Source: Styela clava (Eukaryota). Taken from it: a DNA stretch of 64,000 nt. Both the position numbers and the translations under genes were made by a program. The notes beneath the pieces were generated by a model. That model was not told the origin of the DNA, searched no databases, and saw only the letters and a program-made list of their open reading frames with translations. The stretch covers positions 12,338,001 to 12,402,000 of the forward strand of contig NC_135251.1 in the NCBI RefSeq assembly GCF_964204865.1. Reading direction: 5' to 3'. Below, in pieces: positions 41,572 to 44,500 of this stretch (position 1 is the first letter of the stretch; every line of letters starts with the position of its first letter).

Positions 41572-44500
41572 TTATTTTTGTGATAAAACTTTAGGGTTTA
41601 ATATCTCGATCCAGTACCCATCAGGATCCTTTATAAATGCGAGTCCTTTCATTTTACCTAAAACAGAAAGTATGTTATAAATTAAAAATGTAATGTCAAC
41701 CAAATTTGAACCACAAATAGACAAAACGAATATTACAAAGCCAACTAAGAAGGTACATAAAAATATTAAGAACAGTATATTAAAATTAAATGTGAGGGCA
41801 GATAATATCAATGAAGTCCCAAAACTTGTATTTCAAACCACACATATGATATACACGCGTCATAACTAGAGCTGTGCTTTTCAAATTGAATCACGAATAG
41901 TAAATTGTTCGCATCAGTCAATTTTGAATCGTCACCATCTTGTTACGAGGTGGAATAACTCAATTTTCATTGTGAAGCCATATTTTTGACATGCAATTCT
42001 GCCATAAGACTCGTTTTTCTTTTTATTAAGTTATTGATGAAACATGTGACAAACTGACTGAGTGATCGTTTTTATGTTTTCAGTAATTTGAAGAACCTAT
42101 TTACCTATCACAATGAAAATTCCACATACAATCAAGTCATTAAATATGAAATTCAAATGTCTTTTTAGTTTTCGAGATTGAATTTGTTTAGATTCTGAAA
42201 TCACCAGGTATTCAAAAATAACCAGCCTCAGTCATAAGTTCATCAATTAATAATTCTGAAGCGGTATTTTCAAATATGGTCATTGTAAATTGATAGAAAT
42301 TAGTAATGCAGAATACTTTAGATAAAAATTGTCAGAAATTAAATGAAATCTTTAATGTATTTTTGAATAGAAATATACAAAGTTCTTCAGATAATCATAA
42401 ATCAAATGTCATCCATTTTGAATATAGTACCCGAATATTCGATTCAATTTGGACATTGTAATATCACAATATAATTTGTTTCTCATACCTGCATCAGGTT
42501 TTTTGACAAACTCAACCCCCAGTTTTTCGAATCTTTCACTTGCAGCGTAAACATCTGGAACCTTGATACCGATGTGTCCAAATCCTCTGGGATCAGAATT
42601 TCCGTTGTGATAACTTTGAGATTCATCATTTTCTGTTCCCCAATTACTGAAACAAAGGATCAAGAAACTCATGTAAGCAAAATAATGAAAGTGACAATCT
42701 TGCTTTACCAGGCATGGAATCCAGCTCATAAGCAGAAAATATATACTATATTTGATTAAATCTCAGCAACCTAATATGATCTGGTCACAGTTAGGGCTGA
42801 GCACTTTGAATCGAATATTCGATTCGAATAGTGAATTATTCGAAGTGGTACAGAGCAAAATTCGGAATCGCCGGCATCTTGTTTTTTTTCTTCCGGCAAT
42901 GGTCGAGGTGAAATATCAAATATTTTTCATTAAAGGCATATTTTTTCAATGCAATTCTGACAAATGACTATTTTCTGTAGCGAGGTTTTGTTACATGCCG
43001 GTAAGTGTTTTTCATTGTGTATGAACGCTCTGCAATCTGTCTCAGTGATGTATTCTATGTTTTCAGTTATTCATGTGTTGACAGGACCGATTACAATAAA
43101 AAAAAAGTCGCATAAAAATACATATCCCATTGACGCCCCAAGTATTCGAGATTCAATTGGAAAAAAATATTCGATTCGATTCTGATATTATCAGTTATTC
43201 GAAATTGCCCAGCCCTAGTCACAGCCATAACTGTTAGCCGTTCATTTTCGAACATTGGGATTTGGTGCATTTGGATTTTCTTGCTTATAAAAATCTTTTA
43301 GCAATTTGATAGATCTTTCAGATTGTATTCCTCCAATGCATTCTAACACCGGTCCAAGTGAAGATGTTAGATCTTCATCTAGATCTATATTCAACACAGA
43401 TCCACAACCCCCAAATCTTTCGTTCTTGCAACCGTAAATAACCTTTGGAACACCCATGCATCGAAGCATGCCAGTGCACATGATACAAGGCTCAACAGTA
43501 ACGTAAAGCACACAGTTCTTAAATATTTCTTTTGGTGGTTTGTATTCTTTGGATGTGGTATCGTTATGAATGTTTTTAAAAGCATCATCTATTGCTACTG
43601 CCTCAGCATGCCGTGTTGCATTTTTCGTTTCATTCACTTCATTTCGCCCAACGCCGATTACTTTTTCATTATTGAATACGAGAATGCAGCCGACCGGAAC
43701 TTCTCCACTTTTTAAAGCGATCTCAGCTAACTCAAAAGTCATTTCCAACCATGAGTCTTGCACTTCATTTTTCATTTGAAATGATTAAAATAATAAAAGA
43801 ATACAAAATATAACAAAAACCTGTAAAATATTACAAAATGTACATTTATTAGTAATAATAATAAAGTGTAATCTACTTACTGTGTAAGTTCAATTGTAGC
43901 AGGCCTTGTGAATAACCATCGTCTTTTTTCTTCCAAGTCTTTAGGAATATCTTCAGGTTTTTCATAACCCATGAAATATAATGAAAATTTCATGGAAGCA
44001 TAGTGAAGTGGACAGAGCAACCTAAATATATATGTTTATGTATTAATTTCATAACCTTGCATGATAGGATAGGATTTACATATTCATCCTGAGGAGAGGA
44101 AAGCCGATAAGACGGCTTAACCATATGACGGACCACGGCCTCTCGTCTGGTTACCATTCTACTATGGGATTAGTTAACTTGATGGTGGAGGAAGCCATAA
44201 CCGACAAGCGGTTACGAGAACCACCCTACGGCGGCGAAGTTTACAGCAATTCTGTCGCACATGATCATCCCTACATGGGATTCGAACCTGCAAACACACG
44301 CAGGGACACAAGCGGAGATGCGGTAGCGAGCGTATTCTTAACGCTTGGCACAATGCCCCACACCGCCGAGCCTGAAGAAACATAATGTTAATGTATTGGT
44401 TGAACAAGCTTAAAAAAAAGATGCTGTTTGTTTTCCTGATCTCAAAACTCATACTATGGTAGGCGATTGGCTCACCGTGATACACACTAAGAACAAGCTC

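What the first reader, a model, noticed from the sequence alone, without database searches (positions are those of the whole stretch)
43242..43880. Intronless ADAT2 nested on the same strand in GLO1 intron 3, with its own splice acceptor and an ATGA stop/start overlap
Seen: an intact ADAT2 ORF starts about 105 bp after the GLO1 exon-3 donor (43880), leaving almost no room for its own promoter. A strong acceptor tattttacAG (AG at 43822-43821) lies 45 nt upstream of the ADAT2 ATG. Cis-splicing of GLO1 exon 3 to it would remove a 60-nt intron and read ...[22 protein letters not shown], where the TGA overlaps the ADAT2 start as ATGA. The frame leading into the ATG contains a TAA, so an in-frame fusion is excluded. 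Established: nested genes are more often antisense; ADAT2 is normally multi-exon in vertebrates and essential for tRNA I34; ascidians resolve operons by SL trans-splicing. Inference: one GLO1 pre-mRNA yields either GLO1 or ADAT2, by SL trans-splicing at the intronic acceptor or by a bicistronic termination-reinitiation mRNA. Either route would tie methylglyoxal detoxification to wobble-inosine tRNA editing.
Basis: partly seen in the sequence, partly recalled or inferred. Interest (0 to 1): 0.85.

Follow-up and report, generated by a model that had tools for sequence, protein, structure and literature searches.

The report
ADAT2 gene nested in GLO1 intron
In this sea-squirt genome the only gene for the tRNA-editing enzyme ADAT2 sits, without introns and on the same strand, inside an intron of the glyoxalase gene GLO1; it is expressed as a separate RNA that starts at a splice acceptor, most likely by addition of a spliced leader, which was not seen directly.

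Summary
A 177-codon ADAT2 ORF (43775-43242, minus strand; 1e-57 to human ADAT2; HAE and PCxxC motifs intact) lies in the 1234-nt GLO1 intron between coding exons 3 and 4. It is the only ADAT2 in the 377-Mb genome. The acceptor TTTTACAG|G at 43822-43821, the ATGA overlap and the upstream TAA are all as described.

Assembled RNA contigs from three studies confirm all GLO1 splice junctions and show ADAT2 RNA. In the two runs that reach furthest, the ADAT2 contig ends at 43820 (exactly after the acceptor) and at 43814. No contig covers the 60 nt between the exon-3 donor and the acceptor. GLO1 contigs run from exon 3 into exon 4 without a branch, so the bulk of ADAT2 RNA is not joined to exon 3. 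This argues against the bicistronic reinitiation route and against simple intron retention.

Spliced-leader trans-splicing at 43820 is the best reading (about 0.5). No leader was seen, and I could not identify the species' leader. A start site about 30 nt downstream of an AATAAAT element fits the data as well.

It is a neat variant of known tunicate operon and nested-gene biology, of moderate interest.

The parts
46818..46845 (-). 3' end of a non-coding upstream exon (E0) that can be cis-spliced to GLO1 exon 1. Its 5' limit is unknown. A CpG-rich, TGACGT-rich stretch lies at about 47150-47300.
   Evidence: Joint 45620 to 46818 (GT..AG, 1197 nt) in run X1 only, with low depth there in the other runs. 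Sequence.
45502..45620 (-). GLO1 coding exon 1. It begins directly after a strong acceptor (tttgtgtttAG). ATG at 45576-45574.
45128..45210 (-). GLO1 coding exon 2 ([27 protein letters not shown]).
   Evidence: Motif scan. Joints 45209/45501 and 44019/45126. Boundaries.
43881..44021 (-). GLO1 coding exon 3, ending ...ATIELT + CA (phase 2).
   Evidence: PDB match to lactoylglutathione lyase residues 54-97, 1.7e-11. Joints.
42647..43880 (-). Host intron of GLO1 (1234 nt, GTAAGT...TTTCAG). It is removed in GLO1 mRNA.
   Evidence: Joint 42646/43881 in all four RNA runs, with 139 letters on each side in X4 and X9.
43821..43880 (-). 60-nt segment between the exon-3 donor and the ADAT2 acceptor. It holds GTAAGT, an in-frame TAA (43879-43877), the branch-like TACTAAT (43854-43848), AATAAA/TATA-like AATAAAT (43850-43844), a pyrimidine tract and AG at 43822-43821.
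   Evidence: In X1 and X9 the bin depths are fully accounted for without any contig on this segment (arithmetic in the report).
43776..43820 (-). ADAT2 5' leader (45 nt, T-rich, no upstream ATG).
   Evidence: ADAT2 RNA contigs end at 43820 (X2) and 43814 (X1).
43242..43775 (-). ADAT2 coding sequence: single exon, 177 codons plus TGA. HAE at 43610-43602 and PCIMC at 43490-43476.
   Evidence: Covered by RNA contigs in all four runs with the frame intact. The 8 listed variants are 3 synonymous and 5 mostly conservative.
42790..43222 (.). Copy of a dispersed repeat of about 430 bp (MITE-like), inserted just after the ADAT2 stop codon. It explains the huge RNA depth and the contig breaks here. Its ends are approximate.
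   Evidence: Own-genome search: 1748 first-look candidates, and all 40 copies scored apart from the query's own place match at 78-84% identity. Depth bins.
42489..42646 (-). GLO1 coding exon 4 (NWGTENDES...KKPDAG).
   Evidence: PDB match to lactoylglutathione lyase residues 99-149, 9e-27. Pfam Glyoxalase. Joints.
41001..41657 (-). GLO1 last exon: coding to the stop at 41574-41572, then 3' UTR running at least to 41001.
   Evidence: Joint 41654/42486 and contigs reaching 41001 in all runs..

Best explanation
The animal's only ADAT2 gene is an intronless cistron lodged in sense orientation inside a GLO1 intron. It lies 105 nt after the exon-3 donor. Leaving out a later repeat insertion, it lies about 165 nt before the exon-4 acceptor.

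It is expressed as its own RNA, not as part of a GLO1-ADAT2 bicistronic mRNA. The 5' end of that RNA is made at the intronic acceptor AG 43822-43821, most likely by spliced-leader trans-splicing. That gives a 45-nt leader with no upstream AUG, so ADAT2's AUG is the first one.

The substrate is either the GLO1 primary transcript or a transcript that starts inside GLO1 upstream of the acceptor.
- If it is the GLO1 transcript, each precursor yields GLO1 or ADAT2 but not both, because trans-splicing discards exons 1-3.
- The exon-3 donor is only 31 nt from the branch-like TACTAAT. This could keep the acceptor functionally unpaired by blocking the 60-nt cis-splice.

Downstream there is no canonical poly(A) signal and no donor before exon 4. 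At least some ADAT2 RNA therefore appears to run on into GLO1 exon 4.

Shown: gene identity, single copy, nesting, expression, all GLO1 junctions, and the lack of contig linkage to exon 3.
Inferred: the leader itself, the precursor, the steric argument and the 3' end.
For: - Identity and integrity.
- Single copy: the protein search of the whole assembly finds only this locus. PF00383 finds four loci; the others are ADAT3, cytidine deaminase and dCMP deaminase.
- Closest named homologues are ascidians: Ciona savignyi 63%, Phallusia 59%, Clavelina 56%. Ascidians add one spliced leader to at least 58% of expressed genes and use it to resolve operons (PMC7986045; PMC1488885).
- Splice signals: TACTAAT, a pyrimidine tract and YAG|G, as good as the five RNA-confirmed GLO1 acceptors.
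- RNA: ADAT2 contigs in all four runs from three studies. X2's contig spans 42617-43820 and X1's spans 42617-43814. The end at 43820 is what a k-mer graph gives when reads diverge upstream of that base.
- Bin depths in X1 and X9 leave no contig on 43821-43880.
- GLO1 contigs bridge 43881 to 42646 unbranched.
- GLO1's own first coding exon also starts at an acceptor (45620), and its upstream exon is barely covered. The locus as a whole therefore looks leader-dependent.
- No AATAAA/ATTAAA and no GTRAG between the ADAT2 stop and exon 4.
- X1 and X2 contigs end with the 30-nt (k-1) overlap into exon 4.
Against: - No spliced-leader letters were seen on any listed contig or loose end at 43820. Only 24 of 644 loose ends and 15 of 41 joints were shown.
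- Contigs cannot show true RNA starts, and the tool warns that holes prove nothing.
- X4 and X9 contigs stop at 43782. That is exactly 30 nt past a variant at 43752, so it is a graph break and says nothing about the 5' end.
- The Ciona leader is not multicopy in this genome, and I could not identify the species' leader.
- In Ciona and nematodes, acceptors with an upstream donor are normally cis-spliced (PMC1488885).
- AATAAAT at 43850-43844 lies about 25-30 nt upstream of 43820, so a plain TATA-driven start there fits the same contig ends.
- Read-through into exon 4 is seen in one study only. In X4 and X9 the depth of 42576-42772 is fully explained by exon 4 alone.
Confidence: 0.5

Rival explanations
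1. Independent intronic promoter, no splicing. ADAT2 is an ordinary nested gene whose transcription starts around 43814-43830, driven by elements in GLO1 exon 3 or intron 2 and the AATAAAT box. The acceptor-like sequence is incidental.
For: - A TATA-like AATAAAT lies at 43850-43844, about 25-30 nt upstream of the contig ends at 43820 and 43814.
- No leader letters were seen.
- Same-strand nested genes with their own promoters are common in animals (PMC8527503; PMC3814207, listed).
- AT-rich introns hold many chance TATA-like and acceptor-like strings.
Against: - One contig ends exactly at the base after the AG, which is expected from read divergence at a splice site.
- The full set of branch-like motif, pyrimidine tract and YAG|G sits 45 nt before the ATG.
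- Only 105 nt separate the host donor from the ATG.
- At least 58% of expressed genes in Ciona are trans-spliced, and all sampled tightly linked downstream genes are.
Confidence: 0.22
2. Cholinergic-locus style alternative cis-splicing. A GLO1 upstream donor, most plausibly the non-coding exon ending at 46818, is spliced directly to 43820. This would give a monocistronic ADAT2 mRNA from the GLO1 promoter.
For: - A non-coding upstream exon with a working donor exists (joint 45620 to 46818 in X1).
- The ADAT2 acceptor is strong.
- VAChT nested in the first intron of ChAT is expressed this way from shared 5' exons (own knowledge; papers listed).
Against: - No joint from 43820 to 46818, 45502 or 45128 appears among the listed joints, although 26 joints were not shown.
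- E0 has little or no coverage in X2, X4 and X9, while the ADAT2 contigs there carry depth figures of 17-120.
Confidence: 0.08
3. Exon 3 is cis-spliced to 43820 (60-nt intron), and ADAT2 is translated by termination-reinitiation at the ATGA overlap of a truncated-GLO1/ADAT2 bicistronic mRNA.
For: - The 60-nt segment has all the signals of a mini-intron, and the frame stays open up to the TGA that overlaps the ATG.
Against: - No such joint is listed.
- Exon-3 contigs continue into exon 4 with no branch in four runs, although the ADAT2 contigs carry substantial depth figures.
- The ATGA/open-frame coincidence has a chance of about 0.04.
- Reinitiation after an upstream ORF of about 115 codons is inefficient in eukaryotes without special elements (own knowledge).
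- The 5' splice site to branch distance of 31 nt is short for cis-splicing (own knowledge of minimal distances in other animals).
Confidence: 0.04
4. The ADAT2-region RNA is only retained intron or pre-mRNA of GLO1, and ADAT2 protein is made from it poorly or not at all.
For: - In X1 and X2 the contig continues to the unspliced intron/exon-4 boundary.
Against: - The first 60 nt of the intron are not covered in X1 and X9, and the contig is not linked to exon 3.
- Part of GLO1 intron 4 (41788-41984) has zero depth in X1 and X2, so pre-mRNA is scarce in these libraries.
- ADAT2 is the only copy of a gene regarded as essential.
- The ORF is intact in every run.
Confidence: 0.03

Closest known systems
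SL-resolved operons of Ciona without intercistronic DNA (Satou et al. 2006, PMC1488885; Satou et al. 2008, PMC2760879)
   Same: - Same strand, and almost no spacer.
- The downstream cistron begins at an AG acceptor a few tens of nt before its ATG.
- An AATAAA lies 23 nt upstream of that AG, as at Ciona cistron boundaries.
- The authors already proposed that one precursor may give either the upstream or the downstream mRNA, but not both.
   Different: - Here the downstream cistron lies inside an intron of the upstream gene, not after its last exon.
- The upstream gene continues with two more coding exons beyond ADAT2.
- The acceptor has a partner donor 60 nt upstream.
- No leader and no polycistronic precursor were observed here.
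Cholinergic gene locus (VAChT/unc-17 nested in the first intron of ChAT/cha-1)
   Same: An intronless or nearly intronless gene sits in sense orientation in an intron of a host gene. It has an acceptor ahead of its ORF and is expressed from the host's transcription unit.
   Different: - There the shared upstream exon is non-coding, the two products act in one pathway, and the mechanism is alternative cis-splicing.
- Here three coding exons of GLO1 precede the nested gene.
- No cis joint to the ADAT2 acceptor was seen.
- GLO1 and ADAT2 have no known functional link.
Parallel nested intronic genes in a trans-splicing animal (ctenophore Hormiphora californensis, PMC8527503)
   Same: Many same-strand genes lie within introns in a genome where more than half of mRNAs carry a spliced leader. 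The authors note that this needs special processing to separate host and guest.
   Different: No mechanism or individual case was worked out there. It is a different phylum with an independently evolved leader.
Ordinary same-strand nested genes with their own promoters (Drosophila, mammals)
   Same: A short intronless gene sits inside a host intron.
   Different: Such guests are usually young duplicates or retrocopies in long introns with room for promoter and poly(A) signals. Here the guest is the sole copy of a core gene, and it is packed within about 105 nt and 165 nt of the host splice sites.

Membership tests
ADAT2 / Tad2 (catalytic subunit of the eukaryotic tRNA A34 deaminase) | CDA-fold deaminase domain with the zinc and catalytic motifs H-A-E and P-C-x-x-C | tested here: met
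   Pfam PF00383 at 8.9e-23. HAE at residues 56-58 and PCIMC at 96-100, invariant across 19 homologues.
ADAT2 / Tad2 (catalytic subunit of the eukaryotic tRNA A34 deaminase) | Full-length similarity to experimentally characterised ADAT2, including the C-terminal extension beyond the deaminase core | tested here: met
   1.2e-57 to human 3dh1 and 1.1e-56 to mouse 7nz7, aligned over residues 4-177 to the chain end (...[14 protein letters not shown]). Bacterial TadA scores far lower, at 1e-13 to 1e-20.
ADAT2 / Tad2 (catalytic subunit of the eukaryotic tRNA A34 deaminase) | A partner ADAT3/Tad3 subunit encoded in the same genome | tested here: met
   G000:C8, about 18.1405-18.1416 Mb: a 367-codon open frame, 3.8e-47 to mouse ADAT3 (7nz7_B), with HAV in place of HAE.
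ADAT2 / Tad2 (catalytic subunit of the eukaryotic tRNA A34 deaminase) | Deaminates A34 of tRNAs | not testable with these tools
   Needs an enzyme assay or tRNA sequencing.
Glyoxalase I (GLO1, lactoylglutathione lyase), the host gene | VOC-fold glyoxalase domain with high similarity to solved GLO1 across the exons flanking the host intron | tested here: met
   Exon 3 scores 1.7e-11 against residues 54-97 and exon 4 scores 9e-27 against residues 99-149. Pfam Glyoxalase. All junctions are RNA-confirmed.
SL-resolved tunicate operon | Downstream cistron's mRNA carries the spliced leader joined at the acceptor | tested here: inconclusive
   A contig ends exactly at 43820 in X2, but no leader letters are listed. 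The species' leader was not identified. Raw reads were not available.
SL-resolved tunicate operon | Both cistrons transcribed as one precursor (a polycistronic RNA is detectable) | tested here: inconclusive
   No contig links exon 3 or 43821-43880 to ADAT2. However, contigs drop rare species, and precursors are rare.
SL-resolved tunicate operon | Downstream cistron follows the upstream gene's poly(A) site | tested here: not met
   ADAT2 lies within an intron, upstream of two further GLO1 coding exons. No RNA ending at 43821 was seen.
Retrocopy (processed pseudogene or retrogene) | Intronless copy alongside a multi-exon parent, with poly(A) remnant and target-site duplications | tested here: not met
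   No second ADAT2 in the assembly. No A-tract after the stop. The copy is expressed and intact. An ancient retroposition that replaced the parent cannot be excluded.

The most novel reading that the evidence does not exclude
A single GLO1 precursor is partitioned between two unrelated housekeeping mRNAs by competition at one site. Either the exon-3 donor is cis-spliced to exon 4, which gives GLO1, or the spliced leader is trans-spliced to an intronic acceptor, which gives ADAT2. That acceptor is placed too close to the donor (5' splice site to branch distance of 31 nt) to be used in cis. The ADAT2 mRNA then borrows GLO1's last exons and poly(A) site as its 3' UTR. This would be an intron-nested operon, a cistron arrangement not described for tunicates, with built-in mutual exclusivity.
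Probability: 0.25. Interest if true: 0.65.

Novelty: new variant of a known kind. Interest (0 to 1): 0.45.

Why it matters
ADAT2 is needed for inosine at the wobble position of several tRNAs and is regarded as essential. Here its only copy has no visible room for a promoter or a poly(A) signal and sits inside another housekeeping gene.

If spliced-leader addition at an intronic acceptor frees it, tunicate polycistronic expression extends beyond head-to-tail operons to genes nested in introns. It would also give a clean natural case of competition between cis- and trans-splicing at a defined donor and acceptor. That case could be used to test the "unpaired acceptor" rule and the minimal donor-to-branch distance.

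In practice, gene annotators for tunicates would need to expect such nested cistrons.

If ADAT2 simply has its own start site, this is an ordinary though very tight nested gene.

Tried and rejected
I could fetch neither RNA contigs carrying the ADAT2 protein nor the genomic context of tunicate homologues. Conservation of the nesting is therefore untested.

2. Search for the species' spliced leader and SL RNA genes, all negative:
- The Ciona leader with 0-2 mismatches, its 3' half plus GT, and a donor-plus-Sm-site pattern are not enriched over controls.
- The one large cluster (C3, 24.85-24.96 Mb) is the spacer of a tRNA gene array, not an SL RNA gene.
- Single exact hits look like chance.
- Papers held here give only the Ciona and Oikopleura leaders. 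The Botryllus SL paper and Matsumoto 2010 are not held.

3. Metagenome scan with an ADAT2 alignment. It gave 80 loci, all at 54% identity or less. None has GLO1 next to the ADAT2 relative in a local tblastn. This says nothing about tunicates.

4. Disclosure. I joined the five GLO1 exons inside a local script, only to count codons (180 aa) and to run that local tblastn. No joined sequence went to any database tool, and all database searches of GLO1 were made exon by exon by reference.

5. Other checks that added nothing:
- Rfam and tRNA scans of the window found nothing.
- Upstream minus-strand ORFs have no Pfam match.
- The inverted-repeat search did not recover clear terminal repeats for the element after the stop codon. 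Its repeat nature rests.
- The cytidine deaminase locus did not supply a short intron with which to calibrate minimal intron size.
- Literature searches for ADAT2-GLO1 nesting found nothing.

6. Rejected readings: a silent retrocopy (sole copy and expressed); a fusion protein (TAA in the ATG's frame, and TAA right after exon 3); retained intron (the first 60 nt are absent from contigs).

7. The caps of the look-up of sequencing runs and read laying (one call each) were used. The unlisted joints and loose ends could not be inspected.
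Full report
**What is there.**
On the minus strand the window holds a complete glyoxalase I gene. 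RNA contigs from four public runs (three studies) give these GT..AG junctions:
- E1: 45620-45502, with the ATG at 45576
- E2: 45210-45128
- E3: 44021-43881
- E4: 42646-42489
- E5: 41657 down to at least 41001, with the stop at 41574-41572

One run (X1) also joins a non-coding exon ending at 46818 to E1. The E3 and E4 peptides match solved lactoylglutathione lyases at residues 54-97 and 99-149. The 1234-nt intron between them therefore splits codon 98.

Inside that intron, on the same strand, lies an uninterrupted 177-codon ORF (43775-43242).

**Identity of the guest.**
- The ORF matches human and mouse ADAT2 structures at 1e-57 and 1e-56 over its whole length, including the C-terminal [11 protein letters not shown] tail.
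- It carries the HAE and PCxxC motifs, which are invariant in an alignment of 19 homologues.
- It starts at the same position as its closest relative, which is 75% identical.
- The best named relatives are ascidians: Ciona savignyi 63%, Phallusia 59%, Clavelina 56%. The genome is therefore a tunicate's.
- A protein search of the whole 377-Mb assembly finds only this locus.
- A Pfam PF00383 search finds four loci. The other three are ADAT3, cytidine deaminase and dCMP deaminase.
- This is therefore the sole ADAT2, not a spare retrocopy.

All of them check out.
- The segment 43880-43821 reads GTAAGT, then an in-frame TAA, then TACTAAT (43854-43848), which overlaps AATAAA (43850-45). A pyrimidine tract and TTTTACAG|G follow.
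- The AG at 43822-43821 is the first AG after the donor region. It looks as good as the five RNA-confirmed GLO1 acceptors.
- The 45-nt leader 43820-43776 has no ATG.
- Splicing E3 to 43820 would read ...[19 protein letters not shown] and stop at the TGA of ATGA.
- That coincidence is weak evidence. 37% of composition-matched shuffles keep the frame open, so with the frame and the A after ATG the chance is roughly 0.04.

**RNA evidence.**
The runs are labelled "RNA?" by the tool, but they carry all the GLO1 splice joints, so they are RNA. These are Logan contigs, not reads. They show presence rather than ends or levels, and the tool warns that holes prove nothing. With that caveat:

1. ADAT2 is covered by a contig in every run, with the frame intact. 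The depth figures are 17-120, against 35-214 for the GLO1 contigs.

2. 5' ends:
- X2's contig spans 42617-43820 and X1's spans 42617-43814.
- An end exactly at the first base after the AG is what a k=31 graph gives when reads diverge upstream of that base. The same contig's other end shows this signature, stopping exactly 30 nt (k-1) inside exon 4.
- X4 and X9 contigs end at 43782, exactly 30 nt beyond a variant at 43752. That is a graph break and says nothing about the 5' end.

3. The 60-nt segment. For the bin 43758-43954, the depth predicted from the ADAT2 contig plus the E3 contig alone equals the reported value in X1 (29.9) and X9 (95.5). No laid contig therefore covers 43821-43880 in those runs. 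X2 and X4 leave small residues (about 146 and 118 depth-nt) that I could not inspect.

4. Linkage to exon 3:
- GLO1 contigs cross 43881 to 42646 without a break. X4 and X9 have 139 letters on each side.
- RNA at ADAT2's level joined to E3 would make a solid fork at 43881 and split those contigs. This holds whether the RNA were unspliced or spliced through the 60-nt intron. No such split is seen.
- The bulk of ADAT2 RNA is therefore a separate molecule whose 5' end lies between 43783 and about 43820.

5. 3' side:
- No AATAAA/ATTAAA and no GTRAG donor lies between the ADAT2 stop and E4.
- In X1 and X2 the contig reaches the unspliced intron/E4 boundary and forks the graph there.
- Part of intron 4 (41788-41984) has zero depth in those runs, so this is not general pre-mRNA.
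- In X4 and X9 nothing covers 42647-42772.
- The 3' end is therefore unresolved. Some ADAT2 RNA may use GLO1's last exons and poly(A) site.
- A dispersed repeat of about 430 bp (1748 first-look candidates) sits right after the stop codon. It explains the very high depth and the contig breaks there. Without it, the ORF would lie only about 165 nt from E4.

**Mechanism.**
Ascidians add one short spliced leader to at least 58% of expressed genes and use it to resolve tightly packed operons (PMC7986045; PMC1488885). The following points make trans-splicing at 43820 the best single reading (about 0.5):
- the strong acceptor 45 nt before the first AUG
- the contig end at that exact base
- the lack of linkage to exon 3
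- the lack of room for a promoter
- GLO1's own first coding exon also begins at an acceptor (45620), and its upstream exon is barely covered

Two things hold the confidence down.
- No leader was seen, and I could not identify this species' leader. The Ciona leader is not multicopy here.
- Satou et al. state the general rule that acceptors with an upstream partner donor are cis-spliced rather than trans-spliced.

The rule can be met in two ways:
- The precursor starts inside GLO1, downstream of or close to the E3 donor (internal promoter plus leader).
- The E3 donor cannot use this acceptor because it lies only 31 nt from the branch-like TACTAAT. That is shorter than the minimal distances known from other animals (my own knowledge, not tested here).

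If the GLO1 transcript is the substrate, each molecule gives either GLO1 or ADAT2. Satou et al. already raised that idea for Ciona operons without intercistronic DNA.

**Rivals.**
- Plain start site (0.22). A start about 25-30 nt downstream of AATAAAT (43850-43844) fits the contig ends as well.
- Cis-splicing from the non-coding upstream exon, as at the VAChT/ChAT locus (0.08). It is possible, but no such joint is listed and that exon is hardly covered.
It is disfavoured by point 4 above.
- Intron retention (0.03). It is disfavoured by points 3 and 4 above.

**What could not be done.**
- The metagenome scan returned only distant relatives with no GLO1 nearby.
- Read laying allowed one call and listed 15 of 41 joints and 24 of 644 loose ends.
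- In one search I joined the GLO1 exons inside a local script, only to count codons (180 aa) and to run a local tblastn.

**Verdict.**
- Trans-splicing at the intronic acceptor is plausible but unproven. Reinitiation is unlikely. The proposed functional coupling of the two enzymes has no support.
- This is a new variant of known tunicate operon and nested-gene arrangements. Interest is moderate (0.45).

Noticed in passing
G000:C3:24847565-24961794 (sampled as L008): A tandem array of about 115 kb of tRNA genes (Leu-TAG, Leu-AAG, Ala-AGC, Ala-TGC, Gln-TTG). Each Leu-TAG gene examined is preceded by about 38 nt by ATTCTATTTGCATAAG. This motif matches the Ciona spliced leader at 15 of 16 positions and contains the octamer ATTTGCAT. 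It looks like an upstream promoter element, not an SL RNA gene. Ala-AGC and Leu-AAG have A34 and would be ADAT substrates.
   Followed up: partly
G000:C8:18140535-18141638 (L009:1036-2139): ADAT3, the partner subunit, is encoded as one 367-codon open frame (3.8e-47 to mouse ADAT3, with HAV instead of HAE). The frame opens right after an acceptor-like ttctgacAG with no ATG near its start. The start codon is therefore probably in an upstream exon, or the 5' end is made by splicing.
   Followed up: partly
window 42790-43222: A copy of a dispersed repeat of about 430 bp (1748 first-look candidates genome-wide, copies 78-84% identical). It is inserted 20 nt after the ADAT2 stop codon and is highly represented in RNA contigs.
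   Followed up: partly
window 43955-44350 and 45530-46120: Very high RNA contig depth (thousands) in GLO1 introns 2 and 0. The first stretch contains a tRNA-like ggttcgaatccc box (about 44280), which suggests a tRNA-derived SINE. ARAGORN and Rfam call no tRNA there.
   Followed up: partly
window 43845-43880: Directly after GLO1 exon 3 the unspliced frame stops (CAG TAA). An AATAAA follows 30 nt later, 23 nt before the ADAT2 acceptor AG. This is the layout of a Ciona operon boundary without intercistronic DNA, and it could give a truncated GLO1 mRNA by intronic polyadenylation. No RNA contig supports such a product. AATAAA has a chance of roughly 0.1 in this AT-rich segment.
   Followed up: partly
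window 45620 and 46818-47300: GLO1's first coding exon starts at a strong acceptor. The upstream non-coding exon is joined to it in only one of four runs and is otherwise barely covered. GLO1 itself is therefore probably mostly leader-trans-spliced. A CpG-rich stretch with repeated TGACGT motifs at about 47150-47300 looks like the promoter.
   Followed up: partly
window 43709-43752 and 43255, 43304, 43684: RNA contigs of all four runs differ from the assembly at five ADAT2 sites near the N-terminus (L10M, I19V, S23C and two silent). Single runs add I31T, N174S and one silent change. The reference individual therefore carries a minority haplotype, and the frame is always intact.
   Followed up: yes
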